Position numbers and translations under genes: made by a program. From contig DF236995.1 of NCBI GenBank assembly GCA_000708835.1, positions 1 through 64,000 on the forward strand: 64,000 bases of DNA, in the 5' to 3' direction. Below the pieces are notes generated by a model. It saw only the letters and a list, made by a program, of their open reading frames with translations, made no database searches and was not told the DNA's origin. Positions 16,202 to 34,100 of the stretch are shown here, piece after piece (position 1 is the stretch's first letter; every line of letters begins with the position of its first letter). The DNA is from Klebsormidium nitens. Taxonomy: Eukaryota; Plantae; Klebsormidiophyceae.

Positions 16202-18387
16202 GGACAGACTTTAGACTTCAATTCGTTTGGAGCAGCTTTCAAATGCCCTTCGGACATGTTGCTTGTCCGCACTTTTCCGTTTGGCCGGGCCAGGGGCTTT
16301 GTTCCGGTTGCGAAACGGAAGCCGGAAGTGGCGGGCGGAACGTGGCAGTGGTCGGCAGCGCGCTCGCGATCTGGACGGGGTTGGCTATTGCTAGCAAAGC
16401 TTTGTTGTTGTGAGTCGCTTGAAAGGAGATACCAATCTGCAGTGTACAAAACTGGTAAAGGGTTGATAGACACGCACGCGTAGGAATAAATGGCGCACCC
16501 AATAAGCTAGGTTTCTCCGATTGAACGGTTAGAAAGATTTTGGGCGGAACCCGGAGGCCCCGCCTCATGTGCAGCTTGGCATCGACCGGGCTTGATTGTT
16601 GTTCGTCACACGCGGCACGGGCGTATGTCTCTGCGAGCACCTTTTTAAAATACACAAGATGAGATTGAACAGGCGTGTGCTACGCATTTGCCAATTAAAC
16701 AGTTGGTTGACGCCCTGCGCAGCACCACTTCGGCGCCCGGCCGGCGGTCAGCTGGCATGTCGTGCGCGGCATGCTGTGGTTGATTGGAGAATTAGTTGAT
16801 CCTAAATCAAGCAAGGCAGCCGGAGTCGGACACACACTGAGTAAAGTACCTGGCTTCTGATATTCTGCGGAGTATGTTATCCTACACGTTCAAATATCGA
16901 GTACGGTCCAACAAACTTCAATGTGACCATCAGTGCCGATCTGCATATGTACTCGTGACTTAATATCTATATCGGAAAGCTATTCGAAAGAACCACTGAC
17001 TGATGAAACCATTTACGTTGCATAACTCAGTCATTGGCATGTTTCTCATGCATACCATGTTAATTTGCATGAATGCTTGTACGTTAGCTTACATGTAGGT
17101 TGAGTTAGGCCTTGCACACTAGCTGCTATAGAACAGACTAGCAGCCGCACGTAGCAAGCTAGCTGCGGGGTCAACAAACCATCCCGCCGGTATGGAGTCG
17201 GAGACCGTTTTCCATGCATGGCCATGGTGGCAAAGCCTGGCGTTAATAAATCAGAACTTACCATTGAAGAAACGAACTATAAATGCTGTATATTTCGCTC
17301 AGTGCCCATGTTCACGGTGGCGTGTGGTGCCTAGCCTGAGCAGGCTCACGCGGCAGTATGGAGAACACGCATCACTTGACAATAACCGTCCCCCTATCAA
17401 TCTGGCAATTGAGACAATAGATCATCAGTGCCAGGCCCCCGGCGCGGCCGGCCCGACATGCAGTGAGGCCGCCCCGCTTCGACTCGGAGACTGGCATGAA
17501 TATGATACAAATAGACGTGTCGAATCGACTCGGCAGCTACACTGGCCGCGCATTCAATGAAGCTCGTAGTTTATATATTGACAATCATCATCCAAGCTTG
17601 CAAGTTGTCAACATCTTCAACCCCTTCACATGCCATTGCGTTGCAATGATCGTCTTTTGCCAAGACTAGACTGATCAGTCTTGGTAGGGCCCCCACGATC
17701 TCAAGCAAGCAAGCTGCAGCGTCAACTCATTCACTGATTGTACCCCCGGCGGTCTCACCGGAGCATTGCCCCATGGCTCAGCGTGGCCCAGGGTTTATAA
17801 GAACATGTGACCATCTCAAGTTGCAGGACGGTAGCGGCGGGCTGGCAAGTCGCACACTGCACACCGCCGGCGAGTCGCGGGAGAGCCGGAGCGACGGGGG
17901 AGCTAGCGGGTGGCTAGCGGCGTAACTTGAACAACATGATTCCTACAGTAGTGTCCCCGTAGTGTCGTTGAGCATTGTGTAGCGGGCAATTCTAAATAAT
18001 CCTTACCGCGATGACATTGAATGATGTGTGAACTAGCATCAGGTACGTAGACCGATAGACCATCTGCATTCATGACATATGGAGTGACAGCGGGGAGCTG
18101 ACTCATCGACTCAGTACAGTGTTCAACTGTTCAATGCATCTGCTTCAATCATCTCAATCGTTGGCACTAGTATTGATGTCAAGATGTATATATGTCAGAG
18201 CCCTTGCGACATTGCGAAGCCAGGCTGGATGGCATGGCTGGATAACCTTTTCACATGAGCCGGGCATGAGCCTGGAAGAGTCGCACCTTGCCTGCCTCGC
18301 GGAGATGATATGCCGCCGCTCGAGGTGCACGCCATGCCGACATAATGATATACGGTACAGCCGGGGCCTATCATGCATCAGCTCATC

Positions 18388-18507
18388 GCTGTCGACCGGC
18401 ACGTGAAGGCGGGGCGGGGGGGCGAGACTGCCATTCTGTGGGAGGGGAACGACGTGGGGCGGGATTGTAAGCTGACGTTCCAGCAGCTACAGGACGAAGT
18501 CTGCCAG
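18388..18507 (+). pseudogene. Isolated exon fragment of an acetyl-CoA synthetase
   Basis: Translates without stops as AVDRHVKAGRGGETAILWEGNDVGRDCKLTFQQLQDEVCQ, followed by a GT donor (CAG|GTGTGC). This matches the DRH...AI.WEG....LT.....VCQ N-terminal segment of ACS enzymes. I found no other ACS exons in the window. Confidence 0.8.
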
Positions 18508-20034: not shown

Positions 20035-23000
20035 ATGGCCTTCAGCTTCCAAACAAGTGGTATGTTGCTCCTTCCGCTAGCTGCATTTCTCGCCGCTTGT
20101 TTAGCAAACCCAGGGGCCGCAGTCAGCCCTAACCCAAGCATCCCATCCAACCAATGGATCCCCTCTAAGGGGGGGTGCAGCAAGTATTGCGCCGCTATGA
20201 TGCAAGTCTGCCCCCCATCCCTGTTTCCCCAGGATGGGTTCCAAGCTCTGGCTGACTGCGAGGAAGCATGCCCGCTTTATCTGGTGCGCGGAGACGACGC
20301 TGCCTTATGGGGGGACAGTTTTGAGTGCCGCTTTAACCATGTGGGTTACATCGTAAGTCAGCAGCTGCCAGCGGCGGCTTATTGCCCCCAAGCAGGTGCG
20401 AGCGGAGGTGACACGTGCGTCGGCGGAACAAAGCTGGAAGAGTGAGTGCCCACATATGACAACCTCCTCTTTTCTCATCCCTTCTTTCCAAACACAAATG
20501 GATGCGGTGCACATTTCTCTCTGTTTTTACTTCTGTAAGTTTCAATGCCTTCCTGTGACATCCTACGACGAACGCCTTCTGGTGATATGCTATATTTGCC
20601 TTCAACTGATCGTCTGCGTTGGCCCGTCTCCCGGACGTTTCACTTTAAAGTTTTTCTCATCTGTTTTCCCCCCCTTTCTTTTTTTCCTCCCCTCATCCCT
20701 TGCGGTACTCTGCGGTCAGGACTTCCCTGGTGTCTTAAACGCTGAACTTCTCTGAAACGTTTGTCCTCAAGGAACCTGCATGACATCCGTCGCATCTCCA
20801 AAAACAGACACTGTCAGTAAAAAGACGTTCACCACTGCTGAGTAGATGCACGATTGCTTTAGCTGTGGTGTTTAGAAAGCGAGAACCCCCTTTCACCAGA
20901 TTGTTCAAAGGGAAGACAGATTAGGCAGGAAGGCATGGTGCAGGGCTGTTCCTTTACAGACATGCATGGGGTACCTGATTGCGGGTCCACTTAGTGTTCT
21001 TCCGTGGTTAGCCTCCATTTTTGCTGCAAGTCGTACTTTCAGTCTAGGGTTTTTCTGGAAGGCAGCTGTCATCTCCGTGCCGATTCTTCTGATACGCCCA
21101 CAGTAGGTGATGATCATGTCACATCACAGTCGTTGTCCTTTTTTTGCTTCCCCTTTCCGTTTGAGTATGCCTATGCTCTACCTGCTTTACTGTGGTTATG
21201 CTTCCAACCTGGACTATCCATGCTTGTCACTTTCAAAAAGCAAGGTTTTCAGATACACTTGCCAGATACGCAATTTTTCTAGTCACAACATCCATATTGG
21301 TTGCTATAAGTCTTGTCTGCAAAGCGTTGTGCCTTAACTACCAGACAATCTGATGGTTTCACTTATCTGAGTGCAGTCAAAACAGACTGCCTCACTTTAA
21401 AACGTCCCTTCTCCAGGTTCTTCGAGCTAAAGTCGTTTGGGAAAGCTCAGCTGTGGAATGGAACTCGCTCGCCTCTTGGGAGCCTCCTTACCGGAACCAC
21501 CTACCTAGCAGAGGAGAGGCAGCAACTTCTGTTCAAGAATGTGTTCGACTCATACGAGTTGTATGACGACTTGGTATGTGCGCGGCTGAGCTTGCTACTT
21601 CCAGTGTAATCAAAACCTTCTAGTGCAGCCTCTTGGTAAAAGTCAATCTCTGGTTGAAGTTAAGTCTTGATTGAACGTGATCTATATGACGACGTCCCGG
21701 TACGTGCACAACTGAGCTTGCCACTTTTAAACCGTAATTAGACCTTGTAGTACAGCCTCTGGTGAAGAAGAACCTTGGTAAAAACTAGATTCTTGGTTCA
21801 AGCTATATCTTGGTTGAAAATAACTCTTGATTGATGTGAACCTTGGCTAAGCAGCCGGTGGCTGGTGTGTAGAAACGATGATCTGAGAATCAGAAAGAAT
21901 CAGGTTGTCACTCCTTTTCGGAGCTGCAGTGCCGCTCTTGCACGTCAATCCCGCAGGCGCCTCCACACGAGGCTTGGGTGACGTAAAGATTGAAAATCTG
22001 CATATGGAAAGAATAGAAGAGCGGTCAAAGATGCAGTTTTGGGAATATATTCAGGCCTTCGAGCAGGCACTCTTCGAAGTGATGGACAGAGTGTGGACAC
22101 CTGTCGATACCGTGTCCACTTGCGGATCATACAGACCGGCACGCTCTTCAGATCGTTCCAGGTTCTACAGTTCTGTGTGCCTTGGGTTGGAGCGGGCAGT
22201 CAAACCCCAGCCTCCTTGCCTCTTCGAACCAGCTGACACACTTCTAAATGTTCTCTCCTCTTGGCCTGCATTGCCCAATGACATAACCCGTCTTTCGTTT
22301 CCTTGCCTCAAGCATCCGAACATCAGCTGTTCTCCGTCCGACTTGCGTTACCGCACCGCCGACGGGCGGTGCAACAGCCCCTCCCTCCCGTCCATGGGCA
22401 TGGCCTCTACTCGATTTGGCAAGAACAACCCCCCCGCATTCACACCAGCCTCTTCCTCCGAGCTTCCCCCGGACCTGCTAAACCCCAACCCCTTCCTGGT
22501 CGCCGAGACGCTCCTGAGACGGAACGGCGGATTCCGGCCGGCGGAAGGGCTAAACCTGCTAATCCCGGCCTGGCTCCAGTTCAACAACCACGACTGGTTC
22601 AACCACGGGCGCGACGCGGCCGCGCCGCCGCTGTGCTTACCGATGGGGGCCCTGTCGGACGCGGATCCACTCGGTTCCGCAGCCCGGAACGGCAGCGGAA
22701 CATTGGAACAGGGGGCTGAATGTTTCAACCTTACGCGCACCCAGCAGTCGAGTCGGCCGGGGACTTTTGCCAATACTGTGACGCACTGGTGGGACGCTTC
22801 GCAGCTGTACGGTTCGGACAATCTGACGCAGGGGGGCCTTCGGACGTACGAGGGGGGGGAGATTTGCACAGTGAAGGGGCCGTTTGGAGAGGATCGGCTG
22901 CCGAGGGAGAGCGAAACCGGGTTACCGGTGACCGGGTTTAACGACGACTGGTGGATGGGGCTCAGTTTGATGCACACGCTGTTTGTGAAGGAGCACAACG

Positions 23001-26000
23001 CAGTGGCGCAGGCGATCCAAGTGAGTCCTCGAAGGGTCAAGTTTTCATTGTCTGGAGCAACAAGGAATCAGCAACTGAAAGGGGGGAAGAGCCCCTTTTC
23101 TATTCTCGCTTTCAACTCATCTTAGTTCTCCACGTGCTTGAGCTTTGAGGCGCTCTCAATAGAGGCGGGTCGATCAGCTAGGAAGGAAAGCGAGTAACGC
23201 TGGGGCTTTGTTGGCTCATGTCGGATGGACGTTTTCGTTGGCCTTCTTCCAGGGCCACCAAACCTCTTGCACTGATTGTTCCCAGCCTCCAAAACCTTTT
23301 TTTACGCAATTCAGCCCCAGACTCTGCTCTTCTGCTCTCAGGCGGCCGACCTGTCTCTCTCCGACGAAGAACTGTTCCAAAAGGCGCGGCTCGTCATTGC
23401 GGCGGAGATTGCCAAAATCCATACCCTCGAATGGATGCCCACAATTCTTGGATTCAACCCGGTGCTTTCCTCCGGGTTGGACATCATCTGGCACGGCCTT
23501 AGCGCAGACCTGCCCATCCCGTCGGGTTTTGACACCGGGATCCTGCAGGTAAGAAGGACAGGATTTGAAGAAGGAATCATCCGAAAAGGACTTGCGGGAG
23601 ACGATTTTACCTTTCTGATCGAGGATTAATGATCAGATTCTCATGTTTTGTGCCCGTTCCAGGGCTATTTTTAAGTTGGCGAGCTTTACGCGGCGTTTGA
23701 AGGATATTATGATCCAGGGGAGCGAGCATGCAAGTCTGTGCGACGGCTGTGACAAAGATCTCTCGGCTACCCTGCTCTGGGTATGCGAGCAACGGGCACG
23801 TAATCGTGTGCTTCAAAGCCAATGAAAAGTGATGAGGCTCTTCTGAGACTTTTTGATGTGCTGTCCACGTCTGCTCTTCGTTCCAGGTTCGTTGCACGTG
23901 TGTGCTCCGTCATGCGATTTTGGTTCGTAAACGGCCGAATCTTTCGTTTGCGAGTTTGAACGGTCTCGCTGACGTCAGCAACGCTCCCCTCCTTCTCTGA
24001 TCGCACCCGGCAATTCATGTGACCGTCTGTTGACGCTCCTCCCCCCCCTCTCAGTTTTCGGCGGCTCTGATCGTTGGTGCATCTTCTTCCCTGCTTGGCA
24101 GAGCCCAGCAGTTCGGGGCATCGCCGACAAGACCTACTACGCCGGGACGCCTTTCTCCATCACCGAGGAATTTGCGGCGGTCTCCCGAATGCACTCTCTG
24201 CTGCCGGAGACGATAACGCTCCTGCCAAACAGCACCGTTAACGGGGGCCCGGCAAATGTGACGGTGTATCCGGTCAGCAACACGTCGTTTGCGGGGGCGG
24301 AGGCGCTGCTCGACCGGCATAGCATCCAGGAATGGCTGACCGCTTTTGGAACCGGTAAGCTTTGCGGAGCCTTTGTTCACAAGAGCGCCTCGTATCGACT
24401 TTTATCTGTGTCGAGACGGCTGTGGTCGCAGCTATGCTCGGCATGAGCTCCTTCTAAAAGGACGAGCAAAGTTTGATCAGTTCAAGTGCGACTGCCCATT
24501 TTGGCAGTCTGAGAATGGCCACAACGGCCTGAGATCGTCGTTTCGATCTGACCTTTCTTGCCTCCGTGGAGAAGCACGGGCATTTGCGGCGAAGGTCATC
24601 GCAGGTGAAATATTGCGGCACTTGAGAAATTTGGGCTGCCCATAGAAGTCTGCTTGCTTCTCTGTACCCGCTGTGAACAGTCTCTCAGTCTAGCATTGAA
24701 AAGAAGCCGACCCATCGAGCCACGCGTCCACGCAGGCACCCCCGGCGCGCTGACGCTGAACAACTACCCTGACTTCCTCGCCACACTAGTTCACCCGACG
24801 AGGGGATCCCTCAACATGGCCGCCATCGACATCGTGCGCGACCGCGAGCGCGGCGTACTGCGCTACAACGCGCTCCGGCGCGCGCTGCGGCTCACCCCCA
24901 TCACGACCTTCGAAGACCTCACGCGTGAGGAGTACACCTTATCTTGTAGCGTTGCCAGATTTAAGTCTTTTTCTCACGGTTGAGTTGGAGAACGTTTGAT
25001 CCAAACGGTCGGTGAAAGGCTGAGGGTGCTGCTTCAACGTTTTGACCAGGTTCGACCGAATATGCTTAAGGAAAGGGCAGATCAGAATCTTCTTATCTAT
25101 GCCATTCAAAGGGAGGGGTCAGGACATTCTGCAAGAAACGCTGTGCTGGGAACTGACGTTAACTCTCTTGGAATAGGAACCACAACTCATTATGCTTCTC
25201 GCCGCCATAAAATCAATCGCGGTGCAGCTGTACACGTACATCCAGAATCTTGTCGACACACACTGCCTTGCTTCCTTCTTCTCCGTAGCCGACACGAGCG
25301 TTATGATCCTGCCCCGTCTCTTGTTCCTTGTTTCTCTCATGAACCGCTCCTTTATTTATTGCCGCGACTTCCCGAGCTTCCTAAACTGATGAAACGCCTC
25401 TTCATCGGTCCGTCATTCCCTATTCTCTCATCTGATGAACGCCTCTGCAATCCGATTCACTCCCCCTGTATCTCATCCGCAGTCTTTCTCTTCCGCAGCA
25501 AACGCGACGGTCGTGTCCCTGCTCCGCTCCGTCTACTCCAGCGCTGATGACGTGGACCTCCTCGTCGGCTGCCTCGCGGAGGAGCCGCGGCCGCGGGGTT
25601 TTTCGTTCGGCGAGACCGCATTCACACTCATCCTGCAAATGGCCTCTCGCCTCCTCAAGACCGACCGCTTCTTCCAGGAGGCCTTCACGCCCAACGTGTA
25701 CTCGCAGACGGGGATTGACTGGGTCAACAACGCAACGTTCAAAAACGTAAGTGCCTTGATTCGAGAGAAATGTTTCGGTAGCTAAGTCGGTTACCGCCGT
25801 GAGGCGCTCTGACCTGAGGTCGTTTGAAGTCTGTGACCGACGCTCTTGAAAGATAAGAATTGTCAAAGGCGAGCGAGAGAGTGAGGTCCGGTCCAAACTT
25901 TGAGCATAACTGTTGAGGCCCTTGAATTAACACGTTCAAGTGGACGGTTCTTTCCTCGGCTCGGATTTCGATGTCCGTCCAAAGCTCGCGCCGTTCTCGA

Positions 26001-28979
26001 AGACTATTTTCAAAGCTGCTGCCAAAGACTCCCGACCCCCGTGAAAGCCGACGCTAGGCCGGCAGTGCGAGAGCGTGTCAGATTCGCGCAACGGAATGAT
26101 TGTCGACGCCGAGACATTGTCCATCTCTCGTTGGCTCTCAACATGTGGCCTGATCGATGAGGGACAAGCAAGCCCATTCACCAGAGTCACGAAGAAGAGC
26201 TTTCAGATAAACTCAGGGCCGACAGTATATAAGCAATTAACAAACCGAAGTTGATCTTTGCCGCACAGGTGCTTCTGCGCCACTTCCCGGAGCTCGCCCC
26301 CGCCCTCGCCGGTCTCCCTAACCCGTTCGTAACCTGCAACCCTTTCGGCCAAACCAGCCAACCACCGACCGCCAACTCCTTCCTCCCGAGCGCCTACGAC
26401 GTGGCGACCGCAAAGCTCGCCGCCCGCGGAAAAGGTCGCCCGGGGCTTCAGAATCGAGCGCCCCAGCCACTTTCCGCGGCTGACATTTTCGAGCAGAACC
26501 TGGCAAACCAACCGGACATAAGCTTTGACGATCTGCCCGGTAACCCGGTGGTTGACTGCCGGGTTAGTAAGTTGTTAGCCCCCGTGAAAACCTGTCTCGG
26601 GGGGGTGTCTCAGCGGTGTTGCGAAGCGATCGACGCAGCGTTCGCGCCTGGCGCAAATGCGTCGACCAGAAACTGTTTGTGCTTGCCGACGGTCGCGGCC
26701 GCGGGGCGGCAGGTCGCGCGCGGGTTTGGGGTCGACTTCGAAACGGTGAGGCGGCGCGGAGGTGAACCGACCACCATTGTCAGGTTCTCTGTTGGTTCTA
26801 TATCTGAGACTGGTGCCTGGATCGGAGTAGCTTGCATCAATTCAAGTTGCTTTATGTGCACGGCAAGGTTTGGAAAAGAAACCGGGTTGGAGGCCGATGT
26901 GGATGCGGAGTCTAAGATCTAGACTGGGAGGTTCCGCTTTCTTGAGCCCTTCGAACGAAGGTCTTCAATCCGGCCGGCTGCAAAGCCCCACTTCGCTTCC
27001 TCCCGTCCCAAAGTCTATTCTTGCTGTTCTAACCGACTTACCTAAACGAAGTTTGAAGACCGATCAGGCGTACTTTGATCTCGTAACTTGTTAATGAAAC
27101 ATTTACCCGCTATATTTGACTCTACCCCAGGTTTTGTCCGACTGTTGGATGGACTACGGGCTGCAAACCAACTGGTTTGGCGAGATCAACGGCCACTGCC
27201 CGGCGTTCCCGTCGCAATCCGACCCGTACACGTGGCGCGCGCTCGCGCCCAACATGGTCGTTCTGCTCCTCATCTACTGGGCGTTATGTGCCGCCGCGGA
27301 TTCCGCGCTCCGCCGCTGGGCGCCGCCCTACCGGAACCTCTCGCCGCTCAAGCAGCGGAACGTCGCGACGTACTTCCTCGAGGTCCTGGTGACGTCAGCG
27401 GCGCTCGCGCTGACGCTGACGTACGGCTCGGACGTCCTCTTGTACGGCCGCACCGGATCGCCCAACGTGCGGATCGGCTTACTGCTGATAGCGACGCTCT
27501 ACGTGTTCGAGCTGATCTACCGGAACGAGACCGGAATTCCGCTCCTGCTGCACCATCTCATCACGGTCCTGCTGCTCGTGCTGCTCGTTTTTTCGAGCAA
27601 AGACAACGCGCCGTCGGCCGAGGCGCGTATCGTTCAGCGGTTTGGGCTGCTCATATCGCTCCACGCGTCCACGGAGCAGCTCACGTTCGTGGGGCTCGCC
27701 ATGTACCGGCTGGGCCACCCCTGGGCCGCGCGCGTCATGAAGGTGAGCGCGCGCGAGCCTTTACATTGCGCGCGAACGTTCGCCGAGCAAGGAAGGGGTG
27801 TGGCTCGTGAAATGTTGCGCTCACCTTCTTTTTTCCTGAGATTACTAACTCCGACTTGCTAATGTCTTCAATTCTCCGGCGCTGGTTTTGACCATTGGAG
27901 CAGGGTTGCCTGAAAACACTCATTTGGAAATCTCAGTTGAGGAAGCACCGCATCTGGACTTATTTCGGATCGAGGATGTCGCTTTGAAGCGCCGGTGCCT
28001 CCAATCGGTGGAGCCGCAATCCGGGGCGCATACTAGAGGTTTTCCAGATGCCGTATAAATTTCCTGAGGTCTTGACCAAAGCTAGTGCGAAGTCCTGTCC
28101 AGGCTAGCGGCCGTCCAGACACGAGGAAGTTATATATCAGAGATCACTGGCAGGCCCTTCGAAGCACTCCTGAAATGTTGAGCGACCAGACTCTGGCGTT
28201 CAAAATCCTATTATTGTAGGACTCAATAATAGGAGTGAAGTTACTGACAGCTCTCACTCGGGCACGGTCCACTTCAATGCGAGAGATCAGAATCAGGTCA
28301 GATGCCACTCCGCCTGCCTGGACTTTTTGTCATGCTCGGGTCTGGACCACATGTTTTTAGATACTCATCAACCGTTCCCAAAAAACGGTGCCCTCTCTGC
28401 AGATCTCCACGTGGCAGGTCCTCGTCTTCAAGCTCGTCATCAACGCGCTGACGTGGGTACTCATGATCGACTACTACGTCACCAAATACGACGACCCATC
28501 CGCATCGCGTACCAGCACCAACTGGCACATCGTATGGCCTTTCCTGATCCCCTTACGCAACACGGCTCTCTTCTTCGCCCAACTCTACTCCGTCTACATC
28601 ATCCACGTCATCGCGTCGCAGCACGAGGGGCGCGCGCGCGCGCTCCACTTGGGGCGCCGCGCTGGCGCCGCCAATCCCAGCGGTGGCGACACCTCGTCCG
28701 GTGATGACGTCAGCGAGCCCGGGGGGGGGAAGGTGACGTGGCAGCCGGAGGGCACGCCCAACGAGGAGAAGAAGATGCCTGCTTTTGAGCGGAGCCGGAG
28801 CGCGCCGGCGGCCGCGCGGTTTGCACGCCAGCCTACTTCGCACTGCGAGCACACGTTTGCGCGCCAGGCGGGCGAGCGACAGGATCCGCGACGCGTTCGA
28901 CCAAGACATGGAGATCGTGTGAGCGCGCGCGCGTGCATGGTTTCGAGCCGCTTGGCTCGCGCTCGCGCACAAGGTGGGC
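20035..28979 (+). CDS. Multidomain fusion: signal peptide, Cys-rich module, alpha-dioxygenase-like heme domain (peroxidase-cyclooxygenase superfamily), 8-Cys LTP/prolamin-like domain, and about 7-TM TLC-like domain; 3' end runs into the gap
   Basis: Exons: 20035-20441, 21417-21573, 22313-23020, 23342-23548, 24102-24354, 24736-24924, 25499-25746, 26269-26745, 27131-27742 and 28403-about 28930/28979. Every junction is GT-AG and phase-compatible. DOX-family motifs: YRTADGRCN, AWLQFNNHDWFNH, NTVTHWWDASQLYG, LFVKEHN, ARLVIAAEIAKIHTLEW, PFSITEEFAAVSRMHSLLP, IDIVRDRERGVLRYN, DLLVGCLAE, GETAF and DRFF. Confidence 0.85.
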
Positions 28980-28999
28980 NNNNNNNNNNNNNNNNNNNN
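28980..28999. other. Assembly gap (20 N)
   Basis: Run of N characters, preceded by very GC-rich (GC)n-like sequence. Confidence 1.
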
Positions 29000-31117
29000 T
29001 GATAAGAAGATCCTTCAAAGCGCGCGCAACTTCCTTCGCGTCTGAGGAAGAGAAGCGCATACAGTGTATTTTATCCAATTCTCGGATATAAAGTATCCAG
29101 CCGACTGGTAAAGTGTAGCATATATAATTATCACCACTTTGTAACGTAGGCACGCTCAGATCGGGCCGGAAACTTCACTTGGAAAGTCTATACTTGGACG
29201 TTAATAGTACCCGGATCAAATATACAGAGTCTTGTCACTCCTTGTTTGGGGTTTGTAGTCGTCTTCCCTTCCAGATGCAGGACTCTCTTCGCTTGCAGTC
29301 AATGCAGAAGTACGGTACGTCAAACAACTAGTAGGCAATCAACGTCCTTCACCGGGCGCCACGTCTGCGGCCATGTACAATTGTAGTTGATCATTGTAAA
29401 CAATAGCAAAAAGTATAGACGATCTTAAAGCTGCCCTTCACTGAATTTTTGTCTGCTCACACAAACTCACAACAGATATACAAAGGACTACCGTATAAGG
29501 GCAGAAGAAGAGGCCGTTCTTTTGGATCTTTGACAATGAACGGTAGGAAGGAGCCGGCACCCGCGAATGATTGATATGAACATGCATGTGAGGCGCTTGA
29601 CGATGAAGGATCCGACGAATTCTTAGTGCAGGAGCTAGCCTGCTAATTTCAAAATGTGACCAAGCTTTTCGTGATTTCGTGACCATTGAGTCTGACCGCG
29701 AAAACATGGTTTATGGATACGCATATCACTTTTGATCAGAAAATAGTAGTTCAATGTTCAAGAACCATCCTTCCATAGTGCACATGCCAAACTCGATTGA
29801 AATGCATTTCAATACGGCGGTCAGCGAGGGGGCATGGTCACAACCGGATAGCTTGTCATTGTTATGTTGATTAAAGATCTGGAGAATCTTCAATGTGACG
29901 TTGTGATTGATGTCGAATGCGTCATGCATCTGAAAATTGGTTTAAAACTCGAGCGCCTCTCTGCTATCCCTCAGTGCGATGGGAATCTAGACCCATGGCG
30001 TCTACTATTACCGGCCGCGCCCCTCGGGGCGCGGCTGGCATCGGGAGGACGAGTGCGCTTTTGACGGGGTTTCGCAGGGGTTCTGCGTCATCCTTGCGCG
30101 ATTAAGTTTACAATCATTTGGATAAATCCTTCCTGCATGGGGGCCGAGCCAAGTGACGCAGAATGAACGTCACATGTAATCCTTGCGTACTGACGCGTGT
30201 CAACCAGTTTCCCGGAAAGAGAGCACAAAGTTACTGCTGATTAGCTAACGGGACTGACGACCACATAATATAGGATATAGCGTTACTCACCACTGACCAG
30301 ACGGCTGAGCCTGAGCAGTGAGGTCCAATCCAGATTCCAGTGCCGTCAAGATGAGTCGACGAGAGGCGACGGGCATCACACGGGCATCGGGATCGTTCCC
30401 GGCCCCAGTTGACTCAGCCGAGGAGCGGAGTCGCCCGAAAACTCCGACGTGGTGTCAACTACCTATTAGAGGCTGCAGGCCTGATCTCCAAAAATCGCAA
30501 AGATAAAACACGGATAGTGGTGGCCTTGGGTAACACCAGACCGACCGGTTTGAGGACTGCCGCCGGGACGCTTCGAAAGTTCGTGTCGAACGCTGGTACT
30601 CCTTTTCCGTTCGCATAATGCAGTACAACCCAATAGACCAATACCCAGGAAAGCTCCCTATTTGTACGCTAGAACCTAATCATATGCTGCATGACTGAGT
30701 TGGATCAATCCAATCCAGCTCAGCCCAGCTGGATTGGTGTCCGCCAACTCCGGCGCGGGCGGTCACTAAAGTTGCGAATGCCCATCGTCAATCATGAGCA
30801 TTCCAAGACGTCTGCTCAGTGCTCAGAGTACTTGAGTACGGTACTTATCAGAGTGGGCTCAGATTCAGAGGTTCTCAAGCTCCCTTCTTCCCTAGCTTCG
30901 TCTTTCTGCCAGAGTCTGGTCTTTGCTACGAACCCCCTTGACGCAACGCTGATAATCTAGTATGACTTGAGCTTTGAGGAGTTGAGGGGGAAAGGGCGTA
31001 AGAAAGGTGTTAGTATCTGCGGTAATCGAAGAAAGCTGCCTAGAGAGGTAGACTTCACCTTCTAGTGGCCAGCTCCACATTCGTGCTCCTTCGTGGCCCC
31101 TTCACAGCGGCTCGACA

Positions 31118-34100
31118 TGGGCGGCGCAATGGGAAAGAAGACGCACTTTGTGGCTTTGCAAGTTCTCTTGCTGAGCTTTCTCGTCAGCGCGCAAGGCCAG
31201 AACTCCAGCTGCGCCTCTGGTCAACTCCGCGTTAGGGGTTTCGCCAAGACTCTCACCTATGTTGTAGCAGAGCAGCAGGGGTTCTTTGCCGGGGAGGGCC
31301 TCTCGCTGTGCTTTACCCAGGTAAGTCTTGGAAGTCGCCTTGTCCTTCGCTGAACAGAGTCAAGCGGAGAGGATGGGGTTGTCAGCATTTGTGGTGTTTT
31401 CAAGACAAGGTTCCACATACCCACCTACAGCTGTTGTTCGTACCCACAAGACAGTCATGAGACAGTCATGTACATATCGATGGAGCTCGCATATATCACA
31501 CCACAAATGCTGGTCACTGAACTCAGACAAGCACAGGCACAATGAAGAGACACAGTGGTGCGATACAGCAGCTTAGAAGCCCGGCCAGGTTAAGTAATCA
31601 GTTATAGAGCGCTAACATAACGGCTGCTCCTGAATTGGTACCATTAGCAAATCAAAGCCTTGATGGTTGGGTACGAGGCTGGCTAGCTGGATGTCAGGCG
31701 CCAACTGAACCATGCTTCTGGTCAAAGTAGCTTCTCTTCCAATGTCCATAACATGGGGACAGGAGAACAAGGCATCCGAATGATTTCAAGGAATCTGCAT
31801 ATCGCAGAAGCAGCACTGACTATCAGGCGCACAGGTCTCTTGCTTTCTGATAAGAGTAGAGTTGTCCTTCCAGCCACTTTGTCCTCCTGATAATGGACGC
31901 ACGTACTCCTGGAAACAGCCAGAACCTTTGTCATTACTCAACAGCGTTCATTTTGTTTTCTGGTCTCAGCATGAAGTAGTGCAAGCAATGCAGAAGTAAC
32001 ATCTCATGTATCAAGCCTGTATGTCACACCATAGCAAAATGTTGGCGCGCGACTCTTCTACGTGGCAGCTGCGCACTTGAGCCTCAAAATGTGCAGTAGG
32101 GACAATGCTTTTGTTGACAGTTGGTGTCTTCAACTTACTTGCTCTCAGCATTGTCCTCCAGCTCTGTCAAAAGCCCGACACAATGCACCCCAGCTAAATT
32201 TGCCTTTTAACACCATTGACCCTAAGACCTTATCCTGAAAGGCACTCAAACCCTACCGAGCAATCTAAGTGGCAGTCTTCCATTGTTGGAACGACCTACA
32301 TTCACGTGCTCAAAGGATAGCTGAAAGAGTCTCTTGCAAGCTGCATACGTTTTAACAGATTTTGGATTCTGACCGGAAGTTTATCGTCCACAAACAGTAC
32401 TCTTCATGCAAACTCTGATGGGTTTGTGTTGTCCCTGGTGCAGGTAACTGGCTCCATCGCTCAATTCAACGACTTCAAGGCCGGCAAGTATGACATCCTA
32501 TCATCAGCGCCCGACAACTATATCAACCGGTGCGTTTTCCTGAAGCCCGAAGTACTTTGTAATGCTTTAAATCCAACCTCAGGATCAATGTGAGCATTTA
32601 ACGTAGACTTGCAAGCTGACCTGGTGTCTTGATTTTCGGTGCAGGGCCTTGTGGCCTTCCGTGATCCGCAAAGTGCAGTTGCCACAACACTTCAAAACAT
32701 CTGATTTCAAAAACTAACAGTCCGCCATCGAAATCCTCCCCAGTTCTAGCTCTGGTCAATCCACTAACATGGCATGCTTGTTGTTTAGCAATGCTTTCAA
32801 AACCGAAAGCCAAAGTGAGCTGTTAGAGAAGCTCGATCCAAGGCCGGGGTATACTTCAAGGAGCCAGTGATAGAAAGTTCTTATGGTGCATCCGCATCCC
32901 TGCTGTCTCAGCATTTCCTACATAGTACCCGTTTTTTGCTGGCAAGCAACGAGCGCGTAGCAGCACGGAAGCCTGGCGACAAGTTGCGGTCCTTCTGTAC
33001 CGCTTGATCTCAAGGATTGGCAAGTCCGTCTCAAGCAGATGTGCATCCGACAATCACGCAGTATATTCTTCTCTGCTGCAAGTAGAAGCATTGGTTTCCT
33101 ACGTTTCCATGTCGTGTTGCTCCTTCAATGCGGTGCTCAGTATCGGACGGCGACTTGTAGAGCCCGGAATGTATTCTACGGGACTGTTTTGCAGAGGGAC
33201 GGGCTATAAGATGTAAGTGGCGAAGACGTTTACCGTCGTTTTGGCTGCGGCCAGAGACTCAAACTTTGACACCCTCGTGTCTTTTCCACCCAGCTCACAG
33301 GACTCTTATTGAATGCTACCTAAATTGATTACCAATTAATATCGAGTCCCAGTCAAGTTCTTGGACAAAGAAACGGGATTAACCCGGCTCGAAGGCTTGC
33401 TGTCGCGCCCCAAGTCTGGTCTTCGGATATACAGCCTACTCTACCTACAAGCCTCTAACCACCCACGTACAGTTAACGTTCAAAATATCTGTGCAGCTTT
33501 GTGAACGAGAACCTCCCGCTCCAGATCTTCGCGGAGTCGGGCGAGAGCGAGGGCATTACGATGGTCGGCCCTGGGCGCCGGTGGCATAACGAGCGTGCCG
33601 GATCTGCGGGGCAAGCCTTTCCTGGTGGACGCAGTGGACTCGGGCAACTCTTTCACAGCCCAGTAAATCTTCTCAGTGTTCAATTTGACCCTCGACCGGG
33701 ACTACTCGTTTGTGGTGCGACGGGCTAGTTCTTTCCTTCCCTTCTTCTTCTGAATACTTTGTTTGCAATAGACTATCACCGCGCAGGATATCTGCTCAGT
33801 CATCGACGGAACCTCGAACCGAGACTACATACCTGTGGTGCGCGCCGTTCTTACCTTCCTCTTCCCGTTGAACTTTTCCTTTTTTCTATTTGACTTGACG
33901 ATCATCGCGCAGATTATCTCCTTTTTCTTCGATCGGCATGAGACTCGACCCTTTGAGGACACGTTTGTGGTACGCCTCCTTCTGACTTCCTTTCTACTCT
34001 CAAGTTTTACCCTTTGTTTCTCTTGGGACTCTCCCAGCAGGAAGTTGCAATACGCTTTCAAGTAGACGTGACTTATGTGCACAATCTGCTTCCAAAGGCC

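What the first reader, a model, noticed from the sequence alone, without database searches (positions are those of the whole stretch)
20035..28979. Candidate new system: membrane-anchored heme-oxygenase-fold / lipid-carrier / TLC-like fusion protein
Seen in the sequence: ten exons splice in phase into one ORF ordered signal peptide, 8-Cys module, full alpha-dioxygenase-like domain, 8-cysteine motif, about 7 TM helices and a polar tail. The 8-Cys motif straddles the exon 8/9 junction, which argues the membrane part belongs to the same gene. Established: plant alpha-DOX enzymes are roughly 630-aa single-domain proteins with no signal peptide or TM domain. 8CM folds bind lipids, and TLC domains include ceramide synthases and other acyltransferases. 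I know of no described protein with this architecture. Inference: it is a one-polypeptide lipid assembly line (oxidise or bind, carry, transfer) facing the lumen or wall, perhaps building a hydrophobic surface layer. Alternatively it is a DUOX-like design with a catalytically altered ecto-peroxidase domain on a membrane module.
Basis: partly seen in the sequence, partly recalled or inferred. Interest (0 to 1): 0.9.

Follow-up and report, generated by a model that had tools for sequence, protein, structure and literature searches.

The report
Alpha-dioxygenase fused to ceramide-synthase-fold membrane domain
In the land-adapted green alga Klebsormidium nitens, one ten-exon gene joins a secreted fatty-acid-oxygenase-type haem domain, a small lipid-carrier-like cysteine domain and a seven-helix ceramide-synthase-fold membrane domain, a combination I found in no paper, although this copy has lost the oxygenase's key catalytic tyrosine.

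Summary
The window is Klebsormidium nitens NIES-2285 scaffold DF236995.1:1-64000.

**Gene model.** Ten GT-AG exons (20035-28922) splice in phase into one protein of about 1258 aa:
- signal peptide;
- Cys-rich module;
- alpha-dioxygenase-type animal-haem-peroxidase domain (not a "heme-oxygenase fold");
- 8-Cys LTP-like motif;
- seven TM helices and a tail.

**Evidence that it is one gene.**
- One spliced RNA contig from a ~91% identical homologue joins exons 4-10, including the 26745/27131 junction.
- Two other genomic loci carry all ten exons in the same order.
- A metagenome-project ORF runs from peroxidase into the TM domain without interruption.
- Exon 8 itself holds both the end of the haem domain and six of the eight Cys.

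**Domains.**
- The TM domain has the ceramide-synthase/TLC fold (Z 17.6 to CerS6) and an invariant His-His on TM4. It gets no Pfam TLC hit.

**Status.** Public gene predictions already contain most of the fusion (a 1351-aa model). I found no paper on it. Function is inferred: a lumen- or wall-facing lipid-binding or lipid-oxidising head on a CerS-like acyltransferase.

The parts
20035..20441 (+). Exon 1: start codon, signal peptide (aa 1-24) and an 8-Cys N-terminal module (aa 48-128; motif GDSFECRFNH...YCP.AGASGG.TC).
   Evidence: ORF and GTGAGT donor. It is 62% identical in L002 and L004. An HMM built from the Cys module of fungal members of the same TM family hits this ORF at E 2e-4 among 3445 ORFs; the next unrelated hit is at 0.24. 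No Pfam or NCBIfam hit. The AF2 model failed (pLDDT 46).
21417..21573 (+). Exon 2: N-terminal start of the alpha-DOX-like domain (aa 136-188).
   Evidence: CAG acceptor and GTATGT donor, conserved in L002 and L004. The alignment with bacterial full-length homologue P0171 starts at model aa 149.
22313..23020 (+). Exon 3: first half of the haem peroxidase domain, including the distal His281 (codon 22589-22591, motif QFNNHDWFNH).
   Evidence: Pfam PF03098, E 3.5e-37. PDB best hits are rice and Arabidopsis alpha-DOX, E 4e-26. Splice sites are shared with L002.
23342..23548 (+). Exon 4: haem domain (KIHTLEW helix).
   Evidence: Pfam PF03098. The donor is used in the X6 RNA contig.
24102..24354 (+). 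Exon 5: proximal haem ligand His524 (24192-24194). Ser521 (24183-24185) sits where alpha-DOX has the catalytic Tyr.
   Evidence: Aligned to rice alpha-DOX VYRMH and its Y379F mutant structure 4KVL. All 12 bacterial homologues that cover this site, plus L002 and L004, have YRMH. Both junctions are in the RNA contig.
24736..24924 (+). Exon 6: haem domain.
   Evidence: Pfam PF03098. RNA contig. 84% identical in L002.
25499..25746 (+). Exon 7: haem domain. Arg692-Leu693 (25651-25656) sits where alpha-DOX has Arg558-Arg559.
   Evidence: PDB alignment to 4HHR and 4KVJ. All homologues have SRRL; this copy has SRLL.
26269..26745 (+). Exon 8: last ~22 residues of the alpha-DOX-like domain, a Pro/Gln-rich linker, and Cys 1-6 of the 8-Cys motif.
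   Evidence: Bacterial homologues align up to model aa 743-748, which lies inside this exon. The Cys are conserved in L001, L002 and L004. The atlas feature search points to the Tryp_alpha_amyl / LTP_2 / Prolamin-like clan at a low score of 0.74. No Pfam hit.
27131..27742 (+). Exon 9: Cys 7-8 of the 8-Cys motif, then TM1-TM5 of the TLC/CerS-fold domain. The invariant His1023-His1024 (27551-27556) lie on TM4 and Glu-Gln (TEQ) on TM5.
   Evidence: The 26745/27131 junction (GT..AG) is in the X6 RNA contig. The family has 190 representatives. Fold match to CerS6 Z 17.6 and Lac1 Z 16. Swiss-Prot TLC proteins fill nearly all of the 30 listed hits. Invariant residues from alignment A1.
28403..28922 (+). 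Exon 10: TM6-TM7 and the cytosolic tail. The frame changes around 28868-28874 (G run). The conserved end ...DQDMEIV and its stop (28920-28922) are in the shifted frame.
   Evidence: The 27742/28403 junction appears in four RNA runs. The C-terminal motif is conserved in L001 and L004.
28980..28999 (.). A 20-N assembly gap into which the unshifted ORF runs. It is the artificial end of the finding.

Best explanation
**Shown.** This is one gene for a secretory-pathway membrane protein.
- Outside (lumen or wall): a signal peptide leads a large head made of a Cys-rich module, an alpha-dioxygenase-type haem domain and a small 8-Cys LTP-like domain.
- In the membrane: seven helices with the ceramide-synthase/TLC fold. 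They carry an invariant Tyr (TM3), His-His (TM4), Glu-Gln (TM5) and Lys (TM6). This is the same order of helices on which CerS6 carries Tyr189, His211/His212 and Asp239/Asp242.
- In the cytosol: a tail of about 100 aa.

**Inferred.**
- The membrane domain is a CerS-like acyl-CoA-dependent lipid acyltransferase, or at least a lipid-binding barrel.
- The LTP-like domain sits about 13 residues before TM1, on the outer mouth of that barrel. It would pass a lipid between the barrel or outer leaflet and the haem domain.
- In the relatives that keep Tyr and Arg-Arg (L002, L004, P0069), the haem domain would alpha-oxygenate a fatty acyl chain.
- In the K. nitens copy, with Ser521 and Leu693 but both haem His kept, canonical dioxygenation is probably lost. 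The head then more likely acts as a haem- or lipid-binding module, or as a peroxidase-type module, on the same membrane partner.
For: **One gene.**
- Ten in-phase GT-AG exons.
- One spliced 2029-nt RNA contig joins E4 to E10 in a ~91% identical homologue.
- All ten exons are collinear in L002 and L004.
- P0069 is an uninterrupted 1392-nt ORF running from An_peroxidase into the TM domain.
- The end of the haem domain and six of the eight Cys share exon 8.

**Haem domain.** Pfam PF03098. Alpha-DOX structures are the best PDB hits. It is 40% identical end to end with 560-580-aa bacterial homologues.

**Residue loss.**. Differences between the window and the RNA contig fall 25 of 40 at third codon positions, and the Ser codon is unchanged among the 40 differences listed.

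**TM fold.**. CerS6 residue roles are from PMC11919693. Family invariants.

**Topology.** 12 K+R in the predicted cytosolic loops against 5 outside, and 11 of 13 N-glycosylation sequons lie in the head.

**Recurring theme.** The same TM family is also fused to copper monooxygenase domains: P0125 carries DOMON plus both Cu2 monooxygenase domains, while P0103, P0105 and P0074 carry the C-terminal Cu2 monooxygenase domain only. It is also fused to the same Cys-rich module in basidiomycetes.
Against: - No activity, haem binding or lipid binding was tested.
- The RNA contig is not from this locus. No listed RNA run holds this copy beyond a few words.
- No member of the TM family reaches Pfam TLC even at E <= 1.
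- The His-His to CerS His211/212 equivalence rests on helix order, not on a residue-level superposition.
- The 8-Cys domain has no Pfam hit, and its AF2 confidence was under 50.
- By topology the TLC active site and the haem head lie on opposite faces of the membrane. A direct hand-over therefore needs the lipid to sit in or cross the bilayer.
- This copy has a frameshift before its conserved C-terminus.
Confidence: 0.55

Rival explanations
1. This copy is decaying. The architecture is real in the lineage, but this K. nitens locus is a non-functional or barely functional paralogue.
For: - The catalytic Tyr and Arg559 are lost only here.
- A frameshift precedes the conserved C-terminus.
- The listed RNA runs of the species hold almost none of its words, whereas a ~91% homologue is assembled at depth 67.
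- A second K. nitens locus (L001) is a truncated copy of E8-E10 only.
Against: - 3.8 kb of ORF across ten exons is intact, and every splice site is canonical.
- The Ser codon seems shared with the expressed homologue, and differences to it are biased to third positions, 19 synonymous against 16 non-synonymous codons.
- The frameshift is a single base in a G run about 110 nt from an assembly gap, so it may be an assembly error.
Confidence: 0.15
2. The head is an active oxygenase with different chemistry. The Ser521/Leu693 haem domain is not dead. It would work as a peroxidase or lipid-hydroperoxide-converting enzyme on a substrate without a free carboxylate, for example an acyl chain held by the TLC domain.
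For: - The distal His281, the proximal His524 and the KIHTLEW His are kept.
- The differences to the RNA contig suggest purifying selection.
- Loss of the carboxylate-anchoring Arg would fit a change of substrate.
Against: - The aligned Tyr is the one mutated in the rice Y379F structure 4KVL. From my own knowledge, this Tyr is essential in alpha-DOX, COX and LDS.
- There is no precedent in this clade and no test here.
Confidence: 0.15
3. DUOX-like redox machine. The membrane domain would carry electrons or make an oxidant for the ecto-peroxidase, as in dual oxidases or DOMON-cytochrome b561 proteins.
For: - There is an altered ecto-peroxidase on a multi-pass domain.
- The same TM family is also fused to ascorbate-dependent copper monooxygenase domains, which need an electron supply.
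Against: - The TM fold matches CerS/TLC, then TMEM120A and ELOVL7. No NOX, ferric reductase or b561 chain is among the top 50.
- The only invariant His are two adjacent residues, not two pairs on separate helices.
- The tail has no FAD, NADPH or EF-hand hit.
Confidence: 0.06
4. Annotation artefact. A peroxidase gene and a TLC gene are neighbours that were read together.
For: - The public annotation of this scaffold is inconsistent. It has a 178-aa chimeric "alpha-dioxygenase" and a 1351-aa model that starts inside exon 3 and runs past 31609.
- K. nitens L001 has the 8-Cys plus TLC part without a peroxidase.
Against: - The spliced RNA contig crosses 26745/27131.
- Exon 8 contains both the end of the haem domain and Cys 1-6.
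- A phase-0 intron splits the 8-Cys motif between Cys 6 and Cys 7 in all four loci; the GTGAG donor and CAG acceptor were read in the window, L001 and L004, while the L002 acceptor was not pinned down.
- P0069 is one continuous ORF.
- No start codon with a signal peptide precedes exon 9.
Confidence: 0.04

Closest known systems
Plant and bacterial fatty-acid alpha-dioxygenases (rice 4KVJ, Arabidopsis alpha-DOX1 4HHR; 560-580-aa bacterial 'peroxidase family proteins')
   Same: It has the same haem-peroxidase/cyclooxygenase domain from end to end: 40% identity to the bacterial proteins, and alpha-DOX is the best solved match. The distal and proximal His and the KIHTLEW helix are kept. Relatives L002, L004 and P0069 keep Arg-Arg, and L002 and L004 also keep the catalytic Tyr (the P0069 fragment does not cover that site).
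   Different: Here the domain is secreted (signal peptide, 11 N-glycosylation sequons), preceded by a Cys-rich module and followed by an 8-Cys domain and a 7-TM domain. This copy has Ser for the catalytic Tyr and Leu for Arg559.
Ceramide synthases and other TLC-domain proteins (CerS6 8QZ7, yeast Lac1/Lag1, TLCD4, CLN8)
   Same: Seven TM helices. The fold match is Z 16-17.6 over 223-253 residues. The topology is N-out/C-in. His-His lies at the start of TM4, with a Tyr on TM3 and an acidic residue on TM5.
   Different: No Pfam TLC hit for any of 65 family members, and no Hox-like insert. TM5 carries Glu-Gln (TEQ) instead of Asp-x-x-Asp. The N-terminus carries large ecto-domains. The substrate is unknown.
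Dual oxidases (DUOX)
   Same: An N-terminal ecto-peroxidase-homology domain with altered catalytic residues, joined to a multi-pass membrane domain in one chain.
   Different: The membrane domain here is TLC/CerS-fold, not a NOX ferric-reductase domain. There are no EF hands and no FAD or NADPH domain.
Plant non-specific lipid transfer proteins / 8CM (bifunctional inhibitor-LTP-seed storage clan)
   Same: The pattern C...C...CC...CXC...C...C is conserved in four loci. The language-model feature search puts exon 8 nearest to Tryp_alpha_amyl, LTP_2 and Prolamin-like clusters.
   Different: No HMM hit. The spacings are atypical by my recollection of nsLTP ranges (C2-C3 7 residues, C7-C8 17 residues). 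It is an internal domain directly before a TM helix, not a small secreted protein. The fold is not confirmed.
DOMON/copper monooxygenase proteins with a membrane partner (DBH-like; DOMON-cytochrome b561)
   Same: Members of the very same TM family carry copper monooxygenase heads: P0125 has DOMON plus both Cu2 monooxygenase domains; P0103, P0105 and P0074 have the C-terminal domain. This is a second case of an O2-using ecto-enzyme on this membrane domain.
   Different: It is a different catalytic head, and the membrane partner is not cytochrome b561.

Membership tests
Peroxidase-cyclooxygenase superfamily (Pfam An_peroxidase PF03098) | Profile match over the whole domain, above the gathering score | tested here: met
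   Exon ORFs match profile positions 1-242, 247-282, 368-430 and 419-514 of 530, with scores of 34-129 bits against a cut-off of 25.
Alpha-dioxygenase (alpha-DOX) | Closest solved relatives are alpha-DOX; distal and proximal haem His are present | tested here: met
   4KVJ and 4HHR are the best PDB hits for exons 3, 5 and 7. His281 (HDW motif) and His524 (RMH) are kept.
Alpha-dioxygenase (alpha-DOX) | Catalytic, radical-forming Tyr (rice Tyr379, motif YRMH) | tested here: not met
   The window has SRMH (Ser521, codon 24183-24185), aligned to the Tyr and to the Y379F mutant 4KVL. Twelve bacterial homologues, L002 and L004 all have Tyr.
Alpha-dioxygenase (alpha-DOX) | Arg-Arg pair that anchors the fatty-acid carboxylate (rice Arg558/Arg559) | tested here: not met
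   The window has Arg692-Leu693. All homologues have SRRL.
TLC / ceramide synthase superfamily | Sequence-profile match (Pfam TRAM_LAG1_CLN8 PF03798) | tested here: not met
   No hit for exons 9 and 10 at E <= 0.1, nor for any of 65 family members at E <= 1. An hmmsearch of the family profile against PDB finds no CerS. UniRef does label K. nitens, Seminavis and Capsaspora members 'TLC domain-containing protein'.
TLC / ceramide synthase superfamily | Seven-TM barrel fold of CerS/TLC proteins | tested here: met
   The AF2 model of the 78% identical paralogue has pLDDT above 90 over most of the TM domain. VIA Z is 17.6 (CerS6) and 15.6-16.2 (yeast CerS); TMEM120A and ELOVL7 follow at 13.2-10.7, and the remaining rows score under 9. 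Nearly all of the 30 listed Swiss-Prot AFDB hits are TLC proteins.
TLC / ceramide synthase superfamily | Catalytic His-His on TM4 with an acidic residue on TM5 (Lag1p motif) | tested here: inconclusive
   His-His is invariant in 65 members and lies at the start of the fourth helix; Glu-Gln lies on the fifth. In CerS6, His211/212 are on TM4 and Asp239/242 on TM5 (PMC11919693). No residue-level superposition was available.
TLC / ceramide synthase superfamily | Acyl-CoA-dependent N- or O-acyl transfer | not testable with these tools
   Needs biochemistry.
nsLTP / 8CM helical domain | Eight Cys in the order C-C-CC-CXC-C-C | tested here: met
   C820, C832, C840, C841, C859, C861, C887, C905. All eight are conserved in L001, L002 and L004.
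nsLTP / 8CM helical domain | Profile match or a confirmed four-helix lipid-binding fold | tested here: inconclusive
   No Pfam hit. That part of the AF2 model has pLDDT under 50. The atlas feature search points to the clan only at score 0.74.
Dual oxidase / NOX | Ferric-reductase TM domain with two His pairs, plus FAD and NADPH domains | tested here: not met
   The fold is CerS-like. Only two adjacent His are invariant. The tail has no cofactor-domain hit.

The most novel reading that the evidence does not exclude
The His-His/TEQ branch of the TLC superfamily is a general membrane partner for lumen- or wall-facing O2-dependent lipid oxygenases. These are alpha-dioxygenase heads in Klebsormidium-type algae and copper monooxygenase heads in other eukaryotes, with a shared Cys-rich module that is also present in basidiomycete members. 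If so, this is an undescribed class of single-chain machines that acylate and oxygenate a lipid at one site. It could, for example, make 2-oxygenated acyl lipids for an extracellular hydrophobic layer in early land-plant relatives.
Probability: 0.2. Interest if true: 0.8.

Novelty: new variant of a known kind. Interest (0 to 1): 0.6.

Why it matters
- **Alpha-dioxygenases.** To my knowledge they are known as soluble or lipid-droplet-associated single-domain enzymes, and TLC proteins as stand-alone membrane acyltransferases or lipid regulators, many still without a known substrate. A natural fusion places the two in one reaction space. That gives a concrete hypothesis for an orphan TLC branch that is widespread in eukaryotes (alga, diatom, slime mould, Capsaspora, basidiomycetes).
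- **Second head on the same domain.** The same membrane domain recurs with copper monooxygenase heads, which suggests a general design rather than a one-off.
- **Natural experiment.** The K. nitens copy keeps the haem ligands but has lost the radical Tyr. It can be compared directly with Tyr-bearing relatives.
- **Practical point.** The public K. nitens gene models at this locus are wrong at both ends.

Tried and rejected
- **Pfam and NCBIfam** on exons 1, 2, 8, 9 and 10 gave nothing.
- **Pfam TLC** on 65 family members at E <= 1 gave nothing.
- **Family profile against PDB sequences** found no CerS, so the TLC link rests on fold alone.
- **AF2 of the exon-1 module** with four sequences gave pLDDT 46, unusable for fold search.
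- **8-Cys part of the first AF2 model** was below pLDDT 50.
- **Atlas lead for exon 1** (BfoA_C, Myxococcota, score 0.85) could not be tested. A paper search for 'BfoA' returned only unrelated uses among the papers listed.
- **Two metagenome-contig scans** for the TM exon found no relative.
- **Search for annotated long fusion proteins** used a profile led by an 853-aa family member. It returned only diatom proteins, because that sequence's words dominated. This is not evidence of absence.
- **RNA runs of the species** hold almost none of this copy, so expression of this exact locus is not shown.
- **Exon 2 against PDB** gave no alpha-DOX hit. Its membership of the haem domain rests on the bacterial alignment.
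- **Two-gene artefact and NOX-type readings** were rejected; see the rival explanations.

Full report
**Source.** The window is identical, with 0 mismatches over 23,237 bases, to Klebsormidium nitens NIES-2285 assembly GCA_000708835.1, scaffold DF236995.1. Window coordinates equal scaffold coordinates. A 20-N gap lies at 28980-28999, so the finding's end coordinate is an assembly gap, not a gene end.

**Gene model.** Six-frame reading, splice-site inspection and RNA evidence give ten exons:
- E1 20035-20441
- E2 21417-21573
- E3 22313-23020
- E4 23342-23548
- E5 24102-24354
- E6 24736-24924
- E7 25499-25746
- E8 26269-26745
- E9 27131-27742
- E10 from 28403

All introns are GT..AG, and the exons join into one ORF without stops.

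- Run X6, which carries the same species label, holds a single 2029-nt contig at depth 67.5. It lies on 23519-23544, 24098-24353, 24735-24919, 25499-25748, 26275-26744, 27130-27740 and 28401-28619.
- It therefore crosses every intron from E4 to E10, including the peroxidase-to-membrane junction 26745/27131.
- The contig is only about 91% identical, so it comes from a paralogue or another strain, not from this locus.
- The E9/E10 junction is also seen in three further runs.
- No listed RNA run holds more than a few percent of this copy's own words. Transcription of this exact copy is not shown.
- Of the 40 differences listed between window and contig, 25 are at third codon positions, with 19 synonymous and 16 non-synonymous codons. 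Both copies therefore look constrained.

**Independent support for one gene.**
- *Other loci.* A Logan contig (L002, 11.9 kb) and an 87-kb metagenome contig (L004) each carry all ten exons in the same order and strand. Identity runs from 26% to 84%, lowest in the L002 membrane exons.
- *Continuous ORF.* A 1471-bp contig from a JGI metagenome-project sample (L006, protein P0069) is one uninterrupted ORF. It runs from the last 130 residues of an An_peroxidase domain into the same membrane domain.
- *Shared exon.* Full-length bacterial homologues of 560-580 aa align at 40% identity from model residue ~149 (exon 2) to ~748. The haem domain therefore ends about 22 residues inside exon 8, the exon that also encodes the first six Cys of the 8-Cys motif.
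- *Conserved intron.* The 8-Cys motif is split between Cys 6 and Cys 7 by a phase-0 intron in the window, L001, L002 and L004. Exon 9 holds Cys 7-8 and TM1-5 in one ORF.

**Haem domain.**
- Pfam An_peroxidase covers positions 1-514 of 530 across the exon ORFs.
- Among solved structures, the best hits for exons 3, 5 and 7 are rice fatty acid alpha-oxidase (4KVJ) and Arabidopsis alpha-dioxygenase (4HHR).
- "Alpha-dioxygenase-like" is therefore right, and "heme-oxygenase fold" in the title is a slip.
- The distal His (QFNNHDWFNH) and the proximal His (RMH) are kept.
- The catalytic Tyr is Ser521: SRMH, aligned to VYRMH and to the Y379F mutant 4KVL.
- The second Arg of the carboxylate-binding pair is Leu693.
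- Twelve bacterial homologues that cover the site, L002 and L004 all keep YRMH. Thirteen bacterial homologues, L002, L004 and P0069 all keep the Arg-Arg pair.
- In the X6 contig, the Ser codon is unchanged among the listed differences.

**Membrane domain.**
- Hydropathy gives seven helices at aa 919-1158. Counts are 12 K+R in the predicted cytosolic loops and tail against 5 outside, and 11 of 13 N-glycosylation sequons lie in the head. The topology is N-out/C-in.
- A full-library HMMER search with exon 9 found 190 cluster representatives. Most are stand-alone proteins of 300-350 aa, from K. nitens, Physarum, the diatom Seminavis, Capsaspora and basidiomycete yeasts.
- None has a Pfam TLC hit, even at E <= 1. 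The family profile finds no CerS in PDB sequences.
- An AF2 model of the 78% identical K. nitens paralogue P0001 has pLDDT above 90 over most of the TM domain.
- Foldseek ranks yeast and human ceramide synthases first in PDB. Nearly all of the 30 listed Swiss-Prot AFDB hits are TLC proteins such as TLCD4, TLCD1, TLCD5, CLN8 and CerS.
- VIA-align gives Z 17.6 to CerS6 and 15.6-16.2 to yeast CerS. TMEM120A and ELOVL7 follow at 13.2-10.7, and the remaining rows score under 9.
- Family invariants, in P0001 numbering, are Tyr188 and Glu191 (with nearly invariant Arg195) on the third helix, His205-His206 at the start of the fourth, and the nearly invariant Glu246-Gln247 on the fifth, Arg257 at the end of the fifth, and Lys278 on the sixth.
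- CerS6 has Tyr189 on TM3, the acyl-carrying His211 with His212 on TM4, and Asp239/Asp242 on TM5 (PMC11919693).
- The parallel suggests a CerS-like acyl-enzyme mechanism. It is inferred from helix order, not from a superposition.

**The two Cys-rich parts.**
- *8-Cys motif.* C820, C832, CC840/841, C859xC861, C887 and C905 are conserved in four loci. It has no HMM hit, and its AF2 confidence was low. A language-model feature search puts exon 8 nearest to Tryp_alpha_amyl, LTP_2 and Prolamin-like clusters, but only at score 0.74. I read it as LTP-like by pattern, with the fold unconfirmed.
- *Exon-1 module.* This gave an unexpected result. The same Cys pattern (...G-[DE]-[NS]-x-x-C-R-x-x-H ... 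C-x-[HQ]-x-G-x-[ST]-G-G-x-x-C) sits in the N-terminal ecto-domain of basidiomycete members of the same TM family (P0053, P0055, P0056, P0112, P0121).
- An HMM built from those five segments finds the exon-1 ORFs of the window, L004 and L002 as top hits. Their E-values are 2e-4 to 2e-3 among 3445 six-frame ORFs, and the next hit is at 0.24.
- The N-terminal module and the TM domain therefore travel together well beyond Klebsormidium.

**Other heads on the same TM family.**
- P0125 carries DOMON plus both copper type II monooxygenase domains.
- P0103, P0105 and P0074 carry the C-terminal copper monooxygenase domain.
- Two unrelated O2-using ecto-enzymes are thus found on this membrane domain.

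**C-terminus.**
- L001 and L004 end with a conserved motif (...TFA.QAS...DQD.E..*).
- In the window the same motif, ...SDRIRDAFDQDMEIV*, is in the neighbouring frame, with its stop at 28920-28922.
- The frame changes in a G run at about 28868-28874, roughly 110 nt before the assembly gap.
- The sequence after the paralogue's stop also matches the window's read-through.
The protein is about 1258 aa if the extra base is an error.

**Public annotation.**
- The scaffold carries a 178-aa "alpha-dioxygenase" (P0193). It joins an unrelated upstream piece (18373-18507) to part of exon 1 and to a read-through of exon 2.
- It also carries a 1351-aa An_peroxidase model that starts at a Met inside exon 3 (22394) and runs past 31609.
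- Most of the fusion is therefore already in public gene predictions, truncated at the 5' end and over-extended at the 3' end.
- Full-text searches found no paper describing an alpha-DOX or peroxidase fused to a TLC domain, or treating this K. nitens gene.

**A second K. nitens locus.** L001 (KFL_004000030, P0001) has only the homologues of late exon 8, exon 9 and exon 10. An MRS2-like gene lies upstream, and there is no peroxidase or signal peptide.

**Reading.**
- The architecture is real and lineage-conserved. It is a new arrangement of known domains, not a new kind of system.
- The most likely working model is a CerS-like acyltransferase or lipid barrel whose outer face carries an LTP-like adaptor and an alpha-DOX-type haem head.
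- In relatives that keep Tyr and Arg-Arg, the head probably oxygenates a fatty acyl chain.
- In this K. nitens copy that chemistry is probably lost.
- The assembly-line idea is plausible but untested. It has to account for the active sites lying on opposite faces of the membrane.

Noticed in passing
window 18373-18507 (+): A 45-aa ORF piece is used as the first exon of the public 178-aa 'alpha-dioxygenase' model P0193. It is unrelated to the ten-exon gene and has no Pfam hit. From memory it resembles the N-terminus of an acetyl-CoA synthetase; this was not tested.
   Followed up: partly
window 28868-28874 and 28980-28999: A single-base frame change in a G run lies about 110 nt upstream of a 20-N assembly gap. 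It is probably why the public 1351-aa model runs on into downstream sequence past 31609.
   Followed up: partly
L001:10154-13012 (K. nitens DF237349.1, KFL_004000030): A truncated paralogue with only the late-exon-8, exon-9 and exon-10 homologues (8-Cys motif, TLC-fold domain, tail). It is 78% identical in the TM part. It has no peroxidase exons and no signal peptide, and sits directly after an MRS2-like gene.
   Followed up: partly
proteins P0125, P0103, P0105, P0074: The same TM family is fused to copper type II monooxygenase domains, with P0125 also carrying DOMON. This is a second kind of O2-dependent ecto-enzyme on this membrane domain.
   Followed up: partly
proteins P0053, P0055, P0056, P0112, P0121 (basidiomycetes): Fungal members of the TM family carry a signal peptide, an unannotated ~190-aa domain and the same Cys-rich module as exon 1 of the window gene. 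None has a Pfam hit.
   Followed up: partly
window 31093-31353 (+): An ORF that starts with a signal-peptide-like hydrophobic stretch, probably the start of the next gene downstream. No Pfam hit.
   Followed up: no
run X6 contig laid on window 23519-28619: An expressed homologue, ~91% identical at the DNA level, of the whole E4-E10 region exists under the same species label. Whether it is a second copy in NIES-2285 or the orthologue of another strain could not be settled.
   Followed up: no
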